Shown here: piece by piece, positions 2,583-47,840 of the stretch
Layout: each line of letters begins with the position of its first letter
How positions within the stretch are numbered: the stretch's first letter is position 1
Origin: Octopus bimaculoides
Taxonomy: Eukaryota
Assembly (NCBI RefSeq): GCF_001194135.2
Contig: NC_068983.1
Span: 153,761,352 to 153,813,802, forward strand
Reading direction: 5' to 3'
DNA: 52,451 nucleotides
Position numbers and translations under genes: made by a program
Notes under the pieces: model-generated
Seen by the model: only the letters and a program-made list of their open reading frames with translations
Databases searched by the model: none
Told to the model about the DNA's origin: nothing

Positions 2583-3066
2583 CGCAGAGATTGGCGAAGT
2601 CGGAGATTAGCAAAATCTTCTTGGATTTCCCAAACCAAACAGACCAGGTGAGAGAGCATAACAGAGTAAAAGTAGTGGTAGGAAAACGCACCAAATATGG
2701 TATATAGATGATGTTGCATGCCCTTTTGACCCACGAATAGTTAAGAAGGAAAGCAAAACGATAGATACAACCCTCTGAAATACGAAATAACCCAGCTATG
2801 GAAAATGAAGAAGGTGAAGATAGTGCCAATTATTATTGGGTTCTTGGGGACAGTATCAGAAGGCATCAAGAGTAACATAAAGGAAATTTGAATAGAATGC
2901 TCAGTGGTACTGTTACAAAGGGTTTGCCTTCTTGGACAGCATAATCAGGAAAGATTTAGCTGAAAAGAACAAATAGCATGCTACCATTGGCTGCAGGTAA
3001 GAAGCCCCTTACGGATGCAAGACTCCAGGAGCTCCGACCACACCTGTGATAAAGAAAATAATAATA
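2583..3066 (+). mobile_element. R4/Dong-clade non-LTR retrotransposon 3' end (restriction-like endonuclease domain, 3' UTR, AAT tail), decayed
   Basis: Frameshifted translation gives IFLDFPNQTDQVREHNR..VVV..IDDVACPFDPRIVKKES...LKYEITQLWKMKKVKIVPIIIG.LGTV, the PD..D-type RLE region. It ends in aaaataataataag. Confidence 0.8.
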
Positions 3067-3077
3067 AGAAGAAGATG

Positions 3078-3130
3078 AAGAATGATGATGATGATGATGA
3101 TTATGATAATAATAATAGTAATAATAATGA

Positions 3131-3207
<77 letters not shown>
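3078..3207. repeat. (GAT)n-(AAT)n-(ACT)n-(AAT)n microsatellite
   Basis: Direct reading. Confidence 0.95.
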
Positions 3208-3743
3208 GGGAACTATGTACGCTGAAAGCTGTGTCAACACTGTGGTATAACAACAGAAAGAAGACGGTATAGGCACAGGCCAGAAAATGGTCACAGAAAA
3301 CGAGGAAGTAACCACACTCTGGGATATTCTAATACACAGAGACAGAGAAATTAGGCCGGATATAGTTCTCAAAAAATATGCTTTCTAATTGATGTATCAA
3401 TACTAACAGATAACAATGTTTCTCTAAAAGTAACGGACATACTTTCAAAATACAAAGACCTGGAAATAGAAGTAACTCGAATTTGGAGTTTAAAACCAGA
3501 AACAAGTCCAATCATAGTAGGCGCATTAGGTATGATAAAAAAATATTCAGGCAAATTTATAACAAGAACACCAGGACTTACAACTATGCATCCTACGTAA
3601 AATAATTTAAACCGAGTAAAAATGAGAGCATCACAGTAAACCACAGCACATACCCAAGGCACACAGATCTGCGTTCGGTAGTACAGTGAAAGGAAGAGAT
3701 AAAAATACGACTACTGAATAATAACAGTAATAATAATAATAAT
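3208..3743 (+). mobile_element. Second R4/Dong-clade LINE 3' end (different subfamily), flanked by (AAT)n
   Basis: Frameshifted LCQHCGITTERR.YRHRPE.VTENEEVTTLWDI.IH.DREI..RPDIVL..FLIDVSI.TDNNVSLK..DILSKYKDLEIEVTRIWSLKPET.PIIVGALGMIKK gives the RLE motif RPDI..IDVS. Confidence 0.8.
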
Positions 3744-14102: not shown

Positions 14103-14106
<4 letters not shown>

Positions 14107-14188
<82 letters not shown>

Positions 14189-14433
14189 TCTCTCTCTATC
14201 TCTCTCTCCCCTCTCTCTCTCTCTCTGTTTCTTTCTCCTTTTTCCTCTCTCTCTCTCCCTCCATCCCCCTCTATTTCTCTCTCTGTATATAACTATATAT
14301 ATGCACACATGCACACGTAGATATGTGTATGGGTATGCGCATATGTATTGTGTGTAAGGGTGTGTGTGTGTGTGTGTGCATTGTGTTCATGCGTATGTGT
14401 GTGTGCATTGTGTTTGTGCGTATGTGTGAGTGC

Positions 14434-14480
<47 letters not shown>
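14107..14480. repeat. (CT)n and (TG)n microsatellites
   Basis: Direct reading. Confidence 0.95.
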
Positions 14481-15564
14481 ACGACACAGCGTAAATCAAA
14501 ACTGAAATTAGGCTGAATAACGTGGGTTAATTATGTAAATGCGAATGCCACTGTATGCCTCTGTGTAAGTGTGAGTGCGAGTTTGACGAGTGTGTGTACG
14601 AGTGTGTATGCGAGTGTGTGTGTGTGCGCGTGAAGCCTCATTAGTTGAAGACTACGAAATATAACATGGTAAGATGAAGAGTTATGAGTGGGTAGAAAGT
14701 AGATTATTGTAGAAAGTATATGAACTGTCAACAGCACAGCGGAACGACTATTATTGTATTGCAAAAAGCAAAAGAAACGGAGATAGTATGCTTATAAGCC
14801 AGAATTTAGATCGTATCTACACCTGCAATTACGAAACAAGTCGGGTGGTGTTTTTCTTTTTTTTTTTTGGTTGTCAGTCTAGAATGAAATTGTGCGACGC
14901 TGTCGCGTCGTTCCATATATTCTAATTTCTTGACAGGTTTGAGTTTTGTTTCGTCAGCAATGTTAGCGGGGCTCAACAATTTTAGTGAGAAGCCAGTCTT
15001 TGGGATGTTGCCTTAAATATCTTCAGGATGTGTGTGCTTTAATTAGTAGAGATTGCTTGTTAGGTGGAATCCAAAACAGGATGGGGCGGTGAATGTTTTC
15101 GGTTATTGATGTCGTGTGCAATAATTGATGCAATTAGACTCTTTAGAATATGTAAGCCTTACATTTTTCTTTTTCTCTTTTTTTCTGTTTTTTCTTATTG
15201 TCTTTATTTATTTATTTATTCTCTCACTGTAATAGCATATGGGACTGTGATGATCCATATTGGAGGTATTTAAGGGTTACCGTCTTCAACTCGGTGCAGA
15301 TTTGGCATATGATATCCAACGATTTATTACACAGAGAGAAAGATTATATGTGTCTATACAAAACGTTCTGAATTAAAAGAAGAAGAAAAAAAAAAGATTA
15401 ATAGTTATCGCCAAGCCAACATGGCAGTCCCAAAATTAGGACGAAAGCTGCCGTGAATTGGCTCCAAGAAGCCATCGCCTCTAGCTAGCTATGTGACACA
15501 CGAAACCTGTGTCCTTTATAACCTTCGAACAGGGGAGGTCAGCAGCTTCCCCCTGCTGGTTTGG

Positions 15565-15615
15565 CATCTGCAGACTAGACTAGTTTCAGGGTGTTGCCCT
15601 TTGTCAATGCAGAGC
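15565..15615 (-). ncRNA. Minimal type I hammerhead ribozyme, U3-A8 core variant
   Basis: Minus strand reads GCUCUGCA-UUGACAA-AGGG caaca CCCU-GAAA-CUAG u CUAG-UC^UGCAGAUGC. Stem I has 6 bp plus 2 bp, stem II is 4 bp and perfect, GAAA is present, stem III is self-complementary, and the GUC triplet predicts cleavage between 15573 and 15572. Confidence 0.82.
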
Positions 15616-15850
15616 AGCCAAGCTCCAGCCAGGCGGCGCTACTGACTGTGTCTGTTCGAAGGTTATTTATCTAAGTTCAGTAGAATCTATCCACTGGTTT
15701 TCAGAAATAGAGTTATTAATATTTCTAAGTCTCCCTAAAGGAGACTACGGCAGCGGTACTGGAAATTAATAGTTATCGCCAAGCCAACATGGCAGTCCCA
15801 AAATTAGGACGAAAGCTGCCGAGAATTAGCTCCAAGAAGCCATCGCCTCT

Positions 15851-15902
15851 GCTCTGCATTGACAAGGGGCAACACACTGAAACTAGTCTAGTCTGCATAT
15901 GC
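15851..15902 (+). ncRNA. Second copy of the same hammerhead with weakened stems I and II
   Basis: GCUCUGCA-UUGACAA-GGGG caaca CACU-GAAA-CUAGUCUAG-UC^UGCAUAUGC. The core is intact, with a G-A mismatch in stem II and a C-U mismatch in stem I. Predicted cut after 15893. Confidence 0.7.
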
Positions 15903-16969
15903 CAAACCAGCAGGGGGAAGCTGCTGACCTCCCCTGTTCGAAGGTTATAAAGGACACAGGTTTCGTGTGTCACATAGCTAGCTAGAAGCGATGGCTTCTT
16001 GGAGCTAATTCACGGCAGCTTTCGTCCTAATTTTGGGACTGCCATGTTGGCTTGGCGATAACTATTAATTTCCAGTGCCACTGCCGTAGTCTCCTTTAGA
16101 GAGACTTAGAAATATTAATAACTCTATTTCTGAAAACCAGTGGATAGATTCCACTGAAATTAGATAAATAACCTTCGAACAGACANNNNNNNNNNNNNNN
16201 NNNNNNNNNNNNNNNNNNNNNNNNNNNNNNNNNNNNNNNNNNNNNNNNNNNNNNNNNNNNNNNNNNNNNNNNNNNNNNNNNNNNNNNNNNNNNNNNNNNN
16301 NNNNNNNNNNNNNNNNNNNNNNNNNNNNNNNNNNNNNNNNNNNNNNNNNNNNNNNNNNNNNNNNNNNNNNNNNNNNNNNNNNNNNNNNNNNNNNNNNNNN
16401 NNNNNNNNNNNNNNNNNNNNNNNNNNNNNNNNNNNNNNNNNNNNNNNNNNNNNNNNNNNNNNNNNNNNNNNNNNNNNNNNNNNNNNNNNNNNNNNNNNNN
16501 NNNNNNNNNNNNNNNNNNNNNNNNNNNNNNNNNNNNNNNNNNNNNNNNNNNNNNNNNNNNNNNNNNNNNNNNNNNNNNNNNNNNNNNNNNNNNNNNNNNN
16601 NNNNNNNNNNNNNNNNNNNNNNNNNNNNNNNNNNNNNNNNNNNNNNNNNNNNNNNNNNNNNNNNNNNNNNNNNNNNNNNNNNNNNNNNNNNNNNNNNNNN
16701 NNNNNNNNNNNNNNNNTATATATATATATATATATATAATGTATGTATGTATGAATGTATATGTAGATGTATGTTAATATCACTTTCTAGATATAAATAT
16801 CATATATATATATATATACAAATATATACATATATATATGTATATATACGTCTATATATAAACATATATATGTATATATACGTCTATATATGTATATATA
16901 TATAGATAGATAAATAAATAGAGATAGATATATACATAAATAAATAAATATATATATATTTAAATGTAC

Positions 16970-17005
<36 letters not shown>

Positions 17006-19826: not shown

Positions 19827-19892
19827 TATATATGCAGCATGCGAGAGTTATTTGAGGACAGACTTGGTAATTTAATATAACAATTGTAGAAA

Positions 19893-20113
19893 TATTAATA
19901 CGTGTAAGTCTCTCTAAAGGAGACTACGGCAGCGGTACGCGGTACTGGATATTAATAGTTATCGTCAAGCTAACATGGTAGTCCAGAAAAATAGAACGAA
20001 TGCTGCCGTTGATTAGCTCAAAGAGGCCGTCGCCTCTCGCTAGCTATGTGACACACGAACCTGTATCCATTATAACCTTCGAAAAGGGGAGGTTATCCGC
20101 TTCCCTTGCTGGT
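19893..20113 (-). mobile_element. Diverged partial copy of the 368-bp hammerhead repeat, truncated shortly before the ribozyme
   Basis: aagtctctctaaaggagactacggcagcggtac...attaatagttatcg..aagc.aacatgg...gctagctatgtgacacacgaa.cctgt..cc.ttataaccttcgaa.aggggagg matches 15727-15850 and 15482-15560. Confidence 0.85.
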
Positions 20114-20200
20114 CTTAGGTAAATAATCCTTTGAACATACTCCAGGAGCTCCAACAAAACCTGTGGTAAAGAGAAAATATTATTGTTGTCGTTGTTGTTT

Positions 20201-26230: not shown

Positions 26231-26936
26231 CCAACAATAATTGATTAACAAGATTAATGATTGATATAACTCAGTCAGACGGCAAAATGAGTGGAATGAG
26301 GGATGAATACACTAGTTATGATGAAATATCTCCAGTGATACGCGATCGAATGTGTAAGCTAAATGATGCTTTCGAAAGAGAAGTTTAATTTCATTACATT
26401 TTCGTATATATATATATATATTCGTATATAGAAATCTCCAGGGATACTTTTACCAGCGGACAAAACAAGTAGCATTTACATTGTTGATATATAGTTATAT
26501 CAGTCCATGATTAGGAAGGAATTGCACAGCAAATATAGACACGCTAGTAACAACATATTGAAAATAATTAATTATATAGCTAATACCGTGATAATATTTT
26601 CAGACATCTGCTTCAGTAAACCTATCAGTATTGTACTTATAATGACTACTGGAAACCGCTGGAAGCCAAATCTACTCTAATATAGAAAAATATGTAATGA
26701 CCATTATTTGTACCTTGTCTTATATATCGCTGTGTGAAAACTGGAGCCCATCCTTGAATTTACCATAAAGATTTGTGATAAACCATAACCTTGGACCCTG
26801 GCATAAGAGTACTTGGAGTTCTTCACTAATCTAAACAATATTGTTAGCTCGGTATACTAACAGAGATTATGAACTATTTTGCACGGATTGATATCTCTCA
26901 CTACTAGCTATATAGTCTGTTAAAGTCTGTCATACC

Positions 26937-26976
26937 GGCCATGACGAAGGGAAATAGCCCTGAAACTCGAGTCGCC
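26937..26976 (+). ncRNA. Hammerhead-like motif (minimal type I) with one extra base in the 5' core
   Basis: GGC-C(A)UGACGA-AGGG aaauag CCCU-GAAA-C UCGA G-UC^GCC. Stem II is perfect, ACUCGAGU is a perfect palindrome, the triplet is GUC, and stem I is 3 bp. Predicted cut after 26973. Confidence 0.55.
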
Positions 26977-27979
26977 TTTATATATTTATATTTATATATT
27001 TGATCCTTTATATTGAACACTCAATATTTCATCTACAGTCAATACTTTATTTCATGGTGCCATCCATTTTTATTTTATTTTATATTATATATTGTATATT
27101 ATATTATATATTCTATATTCCATATTCTATACCCCACATTGGTTCTGCAGGAATATAAATAAAACATAAAAAACAGACAGTGTTGGAACTCTTTTAAACA
27201 AAATAATATATTCCTCTATACANNNNNNNNNNNNNNNNNNNNNNNNNNNNNNNNNNNNNNNNNNNNNNNNNNNNNNNNNNNNNNNNNNNNNNNNNNNNNN
27301 NNNNNNNNNNNNNNNNNNNNNNNNNNNNNNNNNNNNNNNNNNNNNNNNNNNNNNNNNNNNNNNNNNNNNNNNNNNNNNNNNNNNNNNNNNNNNNNNNNNN
27401 NNNNNNNNNNNNNNNNNNNNNNNNNNNNNNNNNNNNNNNNNNNNNNNNNNNNNNNNNNNNNNNNNNNNNNNNNNNNNNNNNNNNNNNNNNNNNNNNNNNN
27501 NNNNNNNNNNNNNNNNNNNNNNNNNNNNNNNNNNNNNNNNNNNNNNNNNNNNNNNNNNNNNNNNNNNNGAGAGATATCCATTTCTATCACCTTTTCGATA
27601 TGTCACCAATCTACGGCATTGAAACAGCTAGATGTGAACTCAGAATTTTCACTCATTTAACAATATTTCGAAACTTACAAGAGTCGTATACTGAAATCCC
27701 TGCTATCTTTCTTATTGGACAGAAAATAACGAATGTCTCTTATACTTCAGACACATTATAAAGAAAAGAAAGAAACAAACCAAAAAAAAAAAAATGGATA
27801 GCAGCCATCTTTCTTTAATTACCACATTTGACCCGGCACCTGCAAACATTTTTTTTGTCTTGTTTGCAAACATTTTATTAGTTTATATCCCGTGATAGGA
27901 ATATTTCAGACAGCAATACCACTACAGCAAACCATCTGCACATAAAATTGCATCGATTCATCCAAATATAGAAACAAAA

Positions 27980-45047: not shown

Positions 45048-46790
45048 CAAACACACACACATTACTTTTAATACCCATATTGTTCTTCTGGGTGACTACG
45101 TACGTATATATGTTTCTTTATCGGCCACACAGGGCTGAACACAAAGGGGACAAAATACAAAGTAGAGCTTTTCTTTTTNNNNNNNNNNNNNNNNNNNNNN
45201 NNNNNNNNNNNNNNNNNNNNNNNNNNNNNNNNNNNNNNNNNNNNNNNNNNNNNNNNNNNNNNNNNNNNNNNNNNNNNNNNNNNNNNNNNNNNNNNNNNNN
45301 NNNNNNNNNNNNNNNNNNNNNNNNNNNNNNNNNNNNNNNNNNNNNNNNNNNNNNNNNNNNNNNNNNNNNNNNNNNNNNNNNNNNNNNNNNNNNNNNNNNN
45401 NNNNNNNNNNNNNNNNNNNNNNNNNNNNNNNNNNNNNNNNNNNNNNNNNNNNNNNNNNNNNNNNNNNNNNNNNNNNNNNNNNNNNNNNNNNNNNNNNNNN
45501 NNNNNNNNNNNNNNNNNNNNNNNNNNNNNNNNNNNNNNNNNNNNNNNNNNNNNNNNNNNNNNNNNNNNNNNNNNNNNNNNNNNNNNNNNNNNNNNNNNNN
45601 NNNNNNNNNNNNNNNNNNNNNNNNNNNNNNNNNNNNNNNNNNNNNNNNNNNNNNNNNNNNNNNNNNNNNNNNNNNNNNNNNNNNNNNNNNNNNNNNNNNN
45701 NNNNNNNNNNNNNNNNNNNNNNNNNNNNNNNNNNNNNNNNNNNNNNNNNNNNNNNNNNNNNNNNNNNNNNNNNNNNNNNNNNNNNNNNNNNNNNNNNNNN
45801 NNNNNNNNNNNNNNNNNNNNNNNNNNNNNNNNNNNNNNNNNNNNNNNNNNNNNNNNNNNNNNNNNNNNNNNNNNNNNNNNNNNNNNNNNNNNNNNNNNNN
45901 NNNNNNNNNNNNNNNNNNNNNNNNNNNNNNNNNNNNNNNNNNNNNNNNNNNNNNNNNNNNNNNNNNNNNNNNNNNNNNTGCTGCTTCCTCCCCTGCTACT
46001 ACAACCAATTAACTACTGCTGCTTACACGGACAGAGTTTACTCCCGTTTACCATTACCAACACTGTCACTACTACTACTTCAGCGAACGATTCAAGCCAA
46101 CGCTCTAGACAGCCATTATGTACCCGCATAAAAAACGCTCCCACGTGGACTATGTTGACACCAGTAAGAAACAATTACACATTTTTTAAAATATGTATTT
46201 TTGATAAGGTTCGTTTTATCAAGAACCGAAACATGTTAAAAATTTCTCTGACAAAATTATACATTAAAATTCAATTTTTATATATTGGCGTTTTCAAACT
46301 TCTTTTTTATAAATATATATTCATATATACACATACATATATATATATATAAGTATGTATGTGCATGTATGCATGCATGTATGTACGTATGTATGTATGA
46401 ATATTGTTTCTACGTACACAGCGAGTGCGTTATTGTGTTTGTAGTATCAAGCCAGTATTATTACACATATTGTATATAAGGGCGAAGGTTCCTTCCTGGC
46501 GCTCCAGCAGTTTATTTCTGGTTAAAGAACTGAGATCTGTTCTAAGTAAACTAGAAAAACACAGATTTCACTGCACAGAGTTTTTGTATATTTGCTGCAT
46601 TCCTGCAACTGAAATGGCTGTATCTATTACACTCAGCCTTTGAAGTCATCTACACTTCATATCATATTTTATATATAGATATATATATATGAATAACTAG
46701 ATTCATACATACGTAGACACATATATGTATGTATATACATAGGCACACAAACACACATACATATATGAACACACACATTGAGACATATAT

Positions 46791-46830
<40 letters not shown>

Positions 46831-46842
46831 NNNNNNNNNNAC

Positions 46843-47840
46843 TGTTTCATCCTCTGGAATGAAAGTATAGAAAAGCTCAACGAATTCCAAGCACTTCTAA
46901 ATGGATTAAACGAAAACCTACAATTTACGATGGAATACAACAATCAACAACTACCGTTTTTAGATATGCTCATAAAGAAAGTCGGAAACAAGATAGAGAC
47001 AGACGTCTATTATAAATCCACTGACTCGAAACAGTACCTACCATTTGATTCTTGCCACCCGAGACACACCAGGACTAATATCCCATTTTGTTTAGCCAAA
47101 AGAATATGCACTATAGTATCAGATGCAGACACCCGTTATACACGACTCCAGGAATTGAAATCCACACTCGTAAATAGAAACTATCCACAGCCCTTAATCG
47201 AAAATACGATCCAAAGAGTACTTCAATTAAATACAAAAGAACTTAGACAACCAAGACCCAAGAAGGAAGAAAAATTAAAAACCCTGTCTTACATCTCCAC
47301 ACACAACCCACACAACAATGAGGCCTTCAACAACATACTCCACAGCACAGCTCTACTCAAGAAAGACCCAAAAATGAACCGAATCCTCAATACACATACA
47401 ATCATCAAAAGTAAGAGGCAACCAAAATCAATGAAAAATATTTTAACCCAGGCCAAATTACACTCAACTATAACCACTAAATCTACAGTAAAAAAATGCG
47501 GGAAACCCAACTGTAGGATTTTTTTCAACGTAATAGAAGGATCAGAACATCGATTAGAACAAGGCCATAATTTCACAATAAAAACTAATTTTAAATGTGC
47601 ATCGGAGAACTTGATCTACCTAATTACATGCTCTGAATGCAAACGGCAATATATTGGACACACTAAAAACAGCCTATGTCAGAGGATGGCGGTACAGAAA
47701 TCCCAAATTAGGATCCCATAAAACAGGAAAATACCTCTCAGCCAGCACATCGACCAATGTGCTTACAACAAATTTCCCAAATTCACAACGTTTCCTGTAT
47801 ACAAATTCAAAAACAATGCTAGCCAAAATGAACGCATTAG
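46843..47840 (+). mobile_element. Penelope-like element: RT thumb, Cys-linker and GIY-YIG endonuclease (Neptune-type architecture); 5' end lost in a gap
   Basis: Open ~290 aa from DCFILWN (just after the YIDD motif): QFTME..LPFLDM, YYKSTDSKQYLPFDSCHP, RLQELK, KCGKPNCRI linker, NLIYLITCSECKRQYIGHT (GIY..YIG), then SQHI after a premature stop at 47719-47721. Confidence 0.92.

What the first reader, a model, noticed from the sequence alone, without database searches (positions are those of the whole stretch)
15565..15615. Minimal type I hammerhead ribozyme with a compensatory U3-A8 core pair
Seen: on the minus strand, GCUCUGCA-UUGACAA-AGGG(caaca)CCCU-GAAA-CUAG(u)CUAG-UC^UGCAGAUGC has all three helices and a GUC triplet in hammerhead register. 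Established: the canonical core is CUGANGA..GAAA..NUH, C3 pairs with G8 in the active fold, and the U3-A8 double change preserves that pair. Minimal type I hammerheads with palindromic stem III occur in Penelope-like elements and metazoan retrozymes and can cleave as dimers. Inference: covariation at 3/8 together with intact stems points to a functional self-cleaving RNA that CUGANGA motif searches would miss.
Basis: partly seen in the sequence, partly recalled or inferred. Interest (0 to 1): 0.9.

Follow-up and report, generated by a model that had tools for sequence, protein, structure and literature searches.

The report
Variant hammerhead ribozyme in octopus retroelement
The flagged 50-base motif is very probably a real self-cleaving hammerhead RNA with an unusual but already documented core variant, carried by a small octopus mobile element; it adds a member to a known class and its cleavage is untested.

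Summary
The motif exists exactly as described (minus strand, 15562-15620; predicted cleavage between 15573 and 15572). It is more than chance.

- It lies in a ~368-nt, strongly self-folding repeat (z = -8.8). The repeat is arranged as a partial tandem, head-to-head with an inverted copy that runs into an assembly gap. This is the insertion pattern of Penelope-like elements (PLEs) and retrozymes.
- A model built only from the window's copies finds a homologue in Octopus bimaculoides (E = 7.6e-7). It has the same UUGACAA core, loop 2 and helix I internal loop. 12 of 17 base pairs are changed on both sides while keeping pairing.
- The window's own PLE, and one in O. vulgaris, carry a conserved U3-A8 mini-hammerhead. 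Argonauta PLEs carry C3-G8, and other mollusc PLEs carry A3-U8.
- Rfam detects none of these.

- The ribozyme is full-architecture, not minimal.
- Only one of the three unit copies here is intact.
- U3-A8 hammerheads in PLEs were published in 2014.

Catalysis is untested. I classify it as a new member of a known kind, of moderate interest.

The parts
15562..15620 (-). Intact hammerhead motif (copy 1). Outer helix GGC/GCC, internal loop UGC/U, helix I UCUGCA/UGCAGA, core UUGACAA, helix II AGGG/CCCU with loop CAACA, GAA, palindromic helix III ACUAG-U-CUAGU, C17.
   Evidence: 93.9 bits to its own model. The hammerhead fold scores -15.6 kcal/mol against an MFE of -17.2.
15572..15573 (-). Predicted self-cleavage site, after C17 at 15573 and before U1.1 at 15572.
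   Evidence: Register of the motif. This is an inference and was not tested.
15397..15850 (-). Partial tandem of 1.23 units of a ~368-nt repeat. It contains the single intact hammerhead.
   Evidence: The direct repeat 15397-15482 = 15765-15850 is 98% identical with spacing 368. One unit folds as a circle at -145.3 kcal/mol, against -99.5 +/- 5.2 for shuffles (z = -8.8). GC is 47%, against 35% for the window.
15849..16185 (+). Inverted, 5'-truncated second copy of the unit. It is head-to-head with the first and runs into the assembly gap.
   Evidence: The inverted repeats 15397-15617/15849-16069 are 98% complementary and 15649-15850/15984-16185 are 97%. There are 10 differences in 337 nt.
15846..15904 (+). 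Decayed hammerhead of copy 2. A10.1>G gives G.U, a C>A change gives G.A in helix II, and a G>U change gives C.U in helix I.
   Evidence: It fails the descriptor. The hammerhead fold scores -0.6 kcal/mol against an MFE of -9.2.
16186..16716 (.). Assembly gap (531 N) that cuts off copy 2. (TA)n follows it.
19887..20150 (-). Third, older copy of the unit (~83% identity). Its hammerhead region is degenerate: the core box is mutated and ~25 nt covering GAAA, helix III and the cleavage site are missing. The alignment here is uncertain.
   Evidence: The covariance model finds no hit there with filters off.
26936..26977 (+). Solitary hammerhead-like motif next to TA-rich sequence: GGCC-AUGACGA-AGGG(aaauag)CCCU-GAAA-CUCGAG-UC-GCC. 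It shares helix II with copy 1, but position 3 is A while position 8 is G.
   Evidence: Model R2 scores 21.2 bits, E = 5e-4. Sequence. No Rfam hit.
46197..46242 (+). Mini-hammerhead of a Penelope-like element, with a U3-A8 core: AUUU-UUGAUAA-GGUUC(guuuuaucaa)GAACC-GAAA-CAUG-U-U^AAAA.
   Evidence: The homologous block in the O. vulgaris PLE (L001 11727-11763) differs from it at only one position, in the helix II loop, while the 198-nt region around it is 74% identical.
46729..47721 (+). Fragment of the open reading frame of a Penelope-like element (end of the reverse transcriptase, a linker, and the start of the GIY-YIG nuclease).
   Evidence: Weak Pfam GIY-YIG match. Homologues in Octopus and Argonauta carry RVT_1 + HTH_animal + GIY-YIG.

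Best explanation
What it is. The motif is a genuine type I hammerhead ribozyme of a cephalopod (octopod) lineage in which the catalytic-core pair C3-G8 is replaced by U3-A8. It belongs to a ~368-nt, ORF-less, strongly self-paired repeat. That repeat is a non-autonomous retroelement of the retrozyme / Penelope-like-element (PLE) kind.

Inferred mechanism, by analogy with characterised retrozymes.
- Multimeric transcripts of source arrays fold so that helices I and II and their loop/bulge contact form within each unit.
- The weak palindromic helix III pairs between two units, giving a double hammerhead.
- Each ribozyme cuts after C17, releasing unit-length RNA with 5'-OH and 2',3'-cyclic phosphate ends.
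- A tRNA ligase (RtcB) circularises this RNA, and the circle is copied and inserted by a PLE reverse transcriptase/GIY-YIG nuclease. This produces the partial-tandem plus inverted-copy insertions seen here.

What is shown: the motif, the repeat architecture, the fold stability, the comparative covariation, and the presence of PLEs with the same core variant.

What is inferred: cleavage, dimer dependence, circularisation and mobilisation.

This locus itself is probably a dead insertion. It has one intact ribozyme and no second ribozyme on the same strand.
For: 1. The motif is present and rare by chance.
2. Covariance model R1 was built only from the two window copies. It finds O. bimaculoides L003 3090-3148 at 30.9 bits, E = 7.6e-7 in 400 kb.
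3. That sequence keeps UUGACAA (including N7 = C), loop 2 CAACA(A), a 6-bp helix I followed by a 3x1 internal loop (UGC/U here, UAC/U there) and a palindromic helix III. Meanwhile 12 of 17 pairs differ on both sides yet still pair; the slid-register controls give 0-1.
4. The two elements share no other sequence but share architecture. Each is an inverted pair of copies beside microsatellites, with the hammerhead at the tip of a long helix. Fold z-scores are -8.8 and -8.0.
5. This matches published descriptions. PLE hammerheads can sit 100-700 bp apart on opposite strands, and a U3-A8 variant exists (PMC4209133). PLE insertions form partial tandems plus an inverted 5'-truncated copy, show microsatellite bias and cause assembly problems (PMC8557442). 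Metazoan retrozymes are 170-400-nt self-paired tandem units, 350-390 nt in mussel (PMC7229834).
6. The same genome holds a PLE whose mini-hammerhead is also U3-A8 and is conserved far better than its flanks against O. vulgaris.
7. PLE hammerheads in Argonauta are C3-G8, and those in two other mollusc-type PLE contigs are A3-U8. The 3-8 pair therefore covaries naturally.
8. The predicted dimer MFE is the double hammerhead, -43.9 against 2 x -17.2 kcal/mol.
Against: - No cleavage data exist.
- The Rfam hammerhead models give nothing even at E<=10 in a 101-nt slice.
- The 10.1-11.1 pair is A-U here, not the highly conserved G-C; the O. bimaculoides homologue does have G-C.
- The comparative case rests on essentially two independent family members. 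The second was first seen with a descriptor that requires paired helices, although the R1 E-value is independent of that.
- Within the window the hammerhead is not better conserved than the rest of the unit: 3 of the 10 differences between copies 1 and 2 fall in its 53 nt.
- Copies 2 and 3 are broken.
- The tandem is only 1.23 units, with a single ribozyme per strand, so a unit-length RNA cannot be excised from this locus as assembled.
- I could retrieve no further copies of the 368-nt unit.
Confidence: 0.75

Rival explanations
1. Relic reading. The motif descends from a real hammerhead family, but this copy is catalytically dead or very slow, like many PLE mini-hammerheads. The locus is then only a decaying insertion with no present RNA-processing activity.
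For: - The 10.1-11.1 pair is A-U instead of G-C.
- Two of the three unit copies in the window have broken hammerheads.
- There is no excess conservation of the hammerhead between copies 1 and 2.
- Published PLE mini-hammerheads cleave poorly in vitro (PMC4209133).
- There is only one ribozyme per strand at this locus.
Against: - Copy 1 has every helix intact, and the loop 2 and helix I internal-loop elements are shared with the O. bimaculoides homologue.
- The AGGG/CCCU helix II with its A-U closing pair recurs at a second, independent locus in the window (26936-26977). It is therefore not a private lesion of copy 1.
- The hammerhead fold lies within 1.6 kcal/mol of the MFE, and the dimer MFE is the active double hammerhead.
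Confidence: 0.2
2. Chance reading. An AT-poor, palindrome-rich repeat (for example a foldback element or MITE-like DNA transposon) happens to spell a hammerhead-like three-way junction at the tip of its inverted repeat. No ribozyme is involved.
For: - A relaxed U3-A8 descriptor is expected to hit hundreds of times by chance in a multi-Gb genome (0.11 per Mb of strand).
- The flanks of the motif are an imperfect inverted repeat (D5), so helix I comes for free.
- Rfam is silent.
Against: - No shuffle or Markov hit was as good as the observed 6/4/4 helices.
- An otherwise unrelated O. bimaculoides element carries the same core, the same N7, loop 2 and internal loop, with compensatory helices (E = 7.6e-7 for a model trained only on the window).
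- The genome's PLEs use the same U3-A8 core.
- There are no terminal inverted repeats with a transposase, and no tRNA-like head.
Confidence: 0.05

Closest known systems
Metazoan non-LTR retrozymes (Cervera & de la Pena 2020, PMC7229834), e.g. the 350-390-nt mussel Mytilus galloprovincialis retrozyme
   Same: - The unit is ~368 nt, has no ORF and is highly self-paired.
- It carries a type I hammerhead with a 6-bp helix I, a 4-bp helix II and a weak palindromic helix III.
- Copies are tandemly arranged.
- Autonomous PLEs coexist in the same genome.
   Different: - The core is UUGANAA (U3-A8), not CUGANGA.
- Only 1.23 tandem units are assembled, joined to an inverted copy.
- GC is 47%, at the upper edge of the range given in that paper (<45% in one passage, <50% in another).
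- No RNA or circularity data exist.
- There is no sequence similarity to any described retrozyme that I could test.
U3-A8 mini-hammerheads of Schistosoma mansoni Cercyon Penelope-like elements (Cervera & de la Pena 2014, PMC4209133)
   Same: - The same compensatory change in the catalytic core.
- Association with PLE-type insertions, including pairs of motifs 100-700 bp apart on opposite strands.
- A palindromic helix III, implying dimer action.
   Different: - The Cercyon motifs are minimal: helix I is 4-5 bp without a defined loop 1, helix II is long (7-8 bp), and helix III is absent or nearly so. They sit in the pLTRs of RT-encoding elements.
- The present motif has the full canonical layout with apparently conserved tertiary elements, and it sits in a short non-coding repeat.
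- The window's motif at 46197-46242 is the true counterpart of the Cercyon type.
Classical tertiary-stabilised type I hammerheads of satellite-like repeats (Schistosoma Sm-alpha, newt satellite 2; Rfam Hammerhead_1, RF00163)
   Same: - Type I topology.
- A 6-bp proximal helix I followed by an asymmetric internal loop, a 4-bp helix II with an A-rich loop, and a short palindromic helix III.
- Location in ~330-370-bp repeats.
- The loop-level resemblance to Sm-alpha is recalled from memory and is a lead, not a test.
   Different: - U3-A8 and A10.1-U11.1.
- Not recognised by RF00163 or any other Rfam hammerhead model, even at E<=10.

Membership tests
Hammerhead ribozyme, type I | Three helices around a junction, with helix I open (type I) and the elements in the order helix I - box 1 - helix II - GAA - helix III - H17 - helix I. 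| tested here: met
   Helices are 6 (+3), 4 and 4-5 bp.
Hammerhead ribozyme, type I | Literal core box C3-U4-G5-A6-N7-G8-A9. | tested here: not met
   The sequence is U3-U4-G5-A6-C7-A8-A9. The canonical consensus fails at positions 3 and 8.
Hammerhead ribozyme, type I | A Watson-Crick pair between positions 3 and 8 in the active fold (Martick & Scott 2006, as summarised in PMC3884650). | tested here: met
   U3-A8 can pair. The same double change occurs in 6 motifs from 3 Octopus sources. Related PLE motifs have C-G and A-U. The variant is published.
Hammerhead ribozyme, type I | G12-A13-A14, the A15.1-U16.1 pair, and H17 (not G) at the cleavage site. | tested here: met
   The sequence reads GAA, then A...U, then C17.
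Hammerhead ribozyme, type I | A conserved G10.1-C11.1 pair at the base of helix II. | tested here: not met
   The pair is A-U in copy 1, G.U in copy 2, and G-C in the O. bimaculoides homologue.
Hammerhead ribozyme, type I | Helices supported by compensatory changes among homologues. | tested here: met
   12 of 17 pairs are changed on both sides between the window and L003, and 92% of cells pair. Shuffles reached this 0/500 times and slid registers gave 0-1. There are only two independent lineages.
Hammerhead ribozyme, type I | Match to the curated Rfam hammerhead models. | tested here: not met
   No hit at gathering score or at E<=10. The same holds for L003 and the 26.9-kb motif.
Hammerhead ribozyme, type I | Site-specific, core-dependent self-cleavage. 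| not testable with these tools
   This needs in vitro transcription assays.
Metazoan non-LTR retrozyme | A type I hammerhead inside short head-to-tail repeats of ~170-400 bp (dimers to multimers). | tested here: inconclusive
   The period is 368 nt, but only 1.23 units are present, with one ribozyme on that strand. The second copy is inverted and cut by a gap.
Metazoan non-LTR retrozyme | The unit RNA is highly self-paired. | tested here: met
   The circular MFE is -145.3 kcal/mol, z = -8.8. The L003 arm gives z = -8.0.
Metazoan non-LTR retrozyme | Non-coding, with low GC (<45-50%). | tested here: met
   The longest open stretch in a tandem unit is 62 codons, and it has no protein homologue. 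GC is 47%, which is borderline.
Metazoan non-LTR retrozyme | Autonomous PLEs with hammerheads in the same genome. | tested here: met
   The PLE ORF fragment is at 46729-47721 and its mini-hammerhead at 46197-46242.
Metazoan non-LTR retrozyme | Expressed as unit-length linear and circular RNA. | not testable with these tools
   No transcriptome access.
PLE pLTR mini-hammerhead | Lies in the terminal repeat of an element that encodes RT + GIY-YIG. | tested here: not met
   The 15.6-kb motif has no ORF in or next to its unit. The nearest PLE ORF is 31 kb away and shares no sequence with it. The 46.2-kb motif does meet this feature.
PLE pLTR mini-hammerhead | Minimal layout: short helix I without loop 1, and helix III absent or 1-2 bp. 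| tested here: not met
   Helix I is 6 bp plus an internal loop and a long extension. Helix III is a 10-11-nt palindrome.

The most novel reading that the evidence does not exclude
Octopods may carry an active retrozyme/circular-RNA system whose fully tertiary-stabilised type I hammerhead works with a U3-A8 core. Mollusc PLE and retrozyme hammerheads may together sample at least three Watson-Crick combinations at the catalytic 3-8 pair: C-G in Argonauta, U-A in Octopus, and A-U in other mollusc-type PLE arrays. That would be a natural mutational series for a pair usually treated as invariant. It would also mean current CUGANGA- or Rfam-based censuses undercount hammerheads in cephalopods.
Probability: 0.35. 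Interest if true: 0.6.

Novelty: new member of a known kind. Interest (0 to 1): 0.45.

Why it matters
- It extends hammerhead-bearing retroelements to octopods. I found no description of them there in the searchable literature.
- It shows that the U3-A8 core variant is not confined to minimal, barely active PLE motifs. It also occurs in a full-architecture type I ribozyme.
- Rfam and CUGANGA descriptors miss every variant seen here, so counts of ribozymes and retrozymes in cephalopod genomes are likely too low.
- The C-G / U-A / A-U series offers ready-made natural constructs for testing how the 3-8 pair contributes to catalysis.
- For genome annotation, the locus is an ordinary, partly decayed mobile-element insertion.

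Tried and rejected
- **Rfam.** Scans of the window, of 2.5-kb and 101-nt slices, of L001/L002, of L003 3070-3170 and of window 26915-26995 gave no hammerhead.
- **Exact-pattern scans.** I searched for further copies of the 368-nt unit with an invariant 21-mer and with the ribozyme's 3' half, in metagenome, bacterial/archaeal genome and viral collections. There were 0 hits, as expected for eukaryotic DNA.
- **Spurious-ORF search.** I used the 62-codon open stretch of the unit as a protein query, hoping to find spurious ORFs on other copies. There were no candidates.
- **BLAST against fetched loci.** I searched the unit against twelve fetched octopod/mollusc loci. There were no copies.
- **Mariner-type ORF look-up.** I looked up a mariner-type ORF hoping for many identical places. 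Only one place was returned.
- **tRNA-derived SINE.** ARAGORN finds nothing, and the GTTCGAA blocks are simply the two arms of the long helix.
- **Copy 3 as a cleaved-RNA copy.** I first read copy 3 as a cDNA starting at the cleavage site. A closer alignment shows remnants of the 5' half of the ribozyme and an internal deletion instead, so I dropped that argument.
- **MAFFT alignment.** The MAFFT alignment of the window and L003 motifs was out of register. I replaced it with a model-guided alignment.
- **Antisense hammerhead.** An antisense hammerhead around 15425-15452 has no box 1.

Full report
**1. Observation**

On the minus strand, 15620->15562 reads UGGC UGC UCUGCA | UUGACAA | AGGG CAACA CCCU | GAA | A CUAG U CUAG U | C^ | UGCAGA U GCCA. 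This is a type I hammerhead register.
- Helix I is 6 bp, followed by a 3x1 internal loop and a further helix.
- Box 1 is UUGACAA.
- Helix II is 4 bp with a 5-nt loop.
- G12-A13-A14 is present.
- Helix III runs from A15.1 to U16.1 and is a near-palindrome.
- C17 is at 15573, with cleavage predicted between 15573 and 15572.

A descriptor of my own finds only this site in the window.
- Window shuffles give about 0.01 comparable U3-A8 hits per window and none with helices as good as 6/4/4.
- 46 Mb of Markov sequence give 0.11 loose hits per Mb of strand and none as good.
A whole multi-Gb genome would still contain hundreds of loose chance hits, so the motif alone cannot decide.
- Rfam 15 reports no hammerhead at gathering score, nor at E<=10 even in a 101-nt slice.

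**2. Surroundings**

The motif is part of a repeat with a 368-nt period.
- On the minus strand, 15850->15397 is a 1.23-unit partial tandem. The segment 15397-15482 repeats at 15765-15850 with 98% identity.
- It abuts, head-to-head, an inverted copy on the plus strand (15849->16185) that runs into a 531-N assembly gap followed by (TA)n.
- One unit has 47% GC, against 35% for the window.
- It has no long ORF and no tRNA-like part.
- It folds very stably: the circular MFE is -145.3 kcal/mol against -99.5 +/- 5.2 for shuffles, z = -8.8. The hammerhead sits at the tip of a ~55-bp imperfect helix that prolongs helix I.
- The inverted copy's hammerhead (15846-15904) has three substitutions. Two of them break helices II and I, and the hammerhead fold is no longer competitive (-0.6 against -9.2 kcal/mol).
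- A third, older copy (20150->19887, ~83% identity) keeps only remnants of the 5' half of the ribozyme and lacks ~25 nt around GAAA, helix III and the cleavage site.
- Between copies 1 and 2 the hammerhead is not better conserved than the rest: 3 of the 10 differences fall in its 53 nt.
- These are decaying insertions. Any selection acts on source copies elsewhere.

**3. Whose genome, and which elements live in it**

- An ORF fragment at 46729-47721 has a weak GIY-YIG match. Its homologues carry RVT_1 + HTH_animal + GIY-YIG. The best named ones come from Octopus vulgaris (74% identity), Argonauta hians and O. bimaculoides.
- The window is therefore from an octopod and contains a Penelope-like element (PLE).
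- At 46197-46242, a relaxed scan finds a mini-hammerhead: AUUU UUGAUAA GGUUC(...)GAACC GAAA CAUG U U^AAAA. It is again U3-A8.
- The homologous O. vulgaris PLE locus (L001) has the same motif ~660 nt past the end of the ORF homology. The ribozyme block differs at only one position, in the helix II loop, while the 198-nt region around it is 74% identical.
- U3-A8 is therefore the native, conserved core of this octopus PLE.

**4. A homologue of the flagged ribozyme**

- The same relaxed descriptor (helix I >=4 bp, helix II >=3 bp) first picked this site out in an O. bimaculoides locus, L003, fetched for its PLE gene.
- Covariance model R1, built from the two window copies only, finds L003 3090-3148 at 30.9 bits, E = 7.6e-7 in 400 kb.
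- It reads CAGG UAC AUCUGA | UUGACAA | GAGU CAACAA ACUC | GAA | A CAUCGAUG U | C^ | UCAGAU U CCUG.
- Conserved features are box 1 (including N7 = C), loop 2, the 6-bp helix I, the 3x1 internal loop (U-N-C opposite U) and the palindromic nature of helix III.
- 12 of the 17 pairs are changed on both sides while pairing is kept (92% of cells pair). Shuffles reach this 0/500 times, and slid registers give 0-1 such pairs.
- Caveat: there are only two independent lineages, and the alignment is model-fitted.
- The host element has no other similarity to the window's unit but has the same architecture: two inverted copies (2723-2962 and 3056-3293, 94%) beside microsatellites. The second ribozyme is decayed (U4>C, G16.2>A). 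The arm fold gives z = -8.0, with the ribozyme at the tip of a long helix.
- Conserved unpaired nucleotides with covarying helices are what a functional, tertiary-stabilised ribozyme predicts, and what a chance motif does not.

**5. Mechanism**

- In the monomer, helices I and II are near-certain but helix III has only ~4% probability.
- For two molecules, the predicted MFE is the double hammerhead with an intermolecular 10-bp helix III (-43.9 against 2 x -17.2 kcal/mol). The same holds for the O. bimaculoides motif.
- This agrees with the published behaviour of metazoan type I hammerheads with weak palindromic helix III (PMC4209133, PMC7229834).
- By analogy with characterised retrozymes, multimeric transcripts self-cleave to unit length, are circularised by RtcB and are copied by PLE machinery.
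- The insertion pattern here is the documented signature of PLE-type integration: a partial tandem, an adjacent inverted 5'-truncated copy, a microsatellite neighbourhood and an assembly gap (PMC8557442). PLE hammerheads lying 100-700 bp apart on opposite strands are also described.
- These steps are inferred and not shown.
- The A10.1-U11.1 pair departs from the conserved G-C and may slow catalysis. It recurs in a second motif in the window (26936-26977), so it is not a private lesion of copy 1.

**6. Comparison with what is known**

- The C3-G8 pair of the active fold is established (PMC3884650).
- The U3-A8 covariation was reported in 2014 for Schistosoma Cercyon PLE mini-hammerheads, with ~1,300 hits.
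- Retrozymes of 350-390 nt are known in a mollusc, the mussel.
- The giant squid genome paper lists 235 Rfam Hammerhead_1 hits.
- I found no description of hammerheads or retrozymes in octopods.
- The finding is therefore a new member of a known kind.
- It fails two literal hammerhead criteria (CUGANGA and G10.1-C11.1) and the Rfam models. It meets the structural logic behind them.
- It is not a PLE pLTR mini-hammerhead, and not 'minimal'.
- It fits the retrozyme definition, except that a multimeric array and RNA evidence are lacking.

**7. Extra observation bearing on the 3-8 pair**

- Argonauta PLE loci carry CUGAUGA mini-hammerheads on both sides of the ORF, in opposite orientation.
- A head-to-tail PLE array (L011; three units, period ~3.87 kb) and an independent contig (L012) carry AUGAAUA, i.e. 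A3-U8, with a covarying helix II.
- Two further motifs, window 26936-26977 and the L009 3' region, read AUGANGA. This is either A3 opposite G8, or C3 plus an inserted A. It remains unexplained.

**8. Verdict**

- Confidence that this is a true hammerhead-family element of a retrozyme/PLE-type repeat is about 0.75. Whether copy 1 itself cleaves is roughly even odds to somewhat better.
- Interest is moderate (0.45).

Noticed in passing
window 46197-46242 (+) and 46729-47721 (+); L001 11727-11763: A Penelope-like element fragment (end of the RT plus the start of GIY-YIG) with a U3-A8 mini-hammerhead. The ribozyme block differs from the O. vulgaris PLE's at only one position (in the helix II loop), while the 198-nt region around it is 74% identical. 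In the window the ribozyme piece lies upstream of the ORF piece, across a 10-N scaffold join at 46831-46840.
   Followed up: yes
window 26936-26977 (+); L009 ~3606-3645 (+): Hammerhead-like motifs reading C-AUGANGA. This is either A at position 3 opposite G8, or C3 plus an inserted A. Both have a palindromic helix III and lie next to TA-rich sequence. The window motif shares helix II AGGG/CCCU with the flagged ribozyme. Whether they are active variants or relics is unexplained.
   Followed up: partly
L011 757, 4622, 8491 (+); L012 2866 (+): A head-to-tail PLE array (period ~3.87 kb) from an unidentified ENA assembly, and an independent metagenome scaffold, both carry mini-hammerheads with an A3-U8 core (AUGAAUA). 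Helix II covaries (CUGU/ACAG against CCC/GGG). This is a second kind of compensated 3-8 pair that I did not find described.
   Followed up: partly
L005 12487-12519 (+) and 6205-6173 (-): An Argonauta hians PLE locus has two identical canonical (CUGAUGA, C3-G8) mini-hammerheads flanking the ORF in opposite orientation. This is the inverted-copy arrangement typical of PLE insertions.
   Followed up: partly
window 15397-15617 and 15849-16069: 221-nt arms that are 98% complementary and 231 nt apart. Any read-through transcript would form a long, near-perfect double-stranded RNA hairpin, a plausible substrate for small-RNA pathways or A-to-I editing.
   Followed up: no
window 15425-15452 (+), antisense to the unit: GUCC(caaaauua)GGAC-GAAA-GCUGCC looks like the helix II/GAAA half of a hammerhead, but no box 1 precedes it. 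In the sense RNA it is simply a stable hairpin.
   Followed up: partly
one search hit list (P0071, P0089, P0113, P0131, P0146, P0157): Full-length PLE proteins (RT + GIY-YIG) are deposited as proteins of bacterial symbiont MAGs (Candidatus Thiodiazotropha, Solemya velum gill symbiont). These are most likely host bivalve DNA binned with the symbiont. One Mytilus 'Toll-like receptor 4' model (P0080) also contains a PLE domain.
   Followed up: no
whole window: The draft-quality sequence has 12 N gaps and about 80 microsatellite arrays (TRF rows). The repeat elements sit next to (CT)n/(TG)n (14106-14621) and (TA)n (16717-16985), in line with the microsatellite insertion bias reported for PLEs.
   Followed up: no
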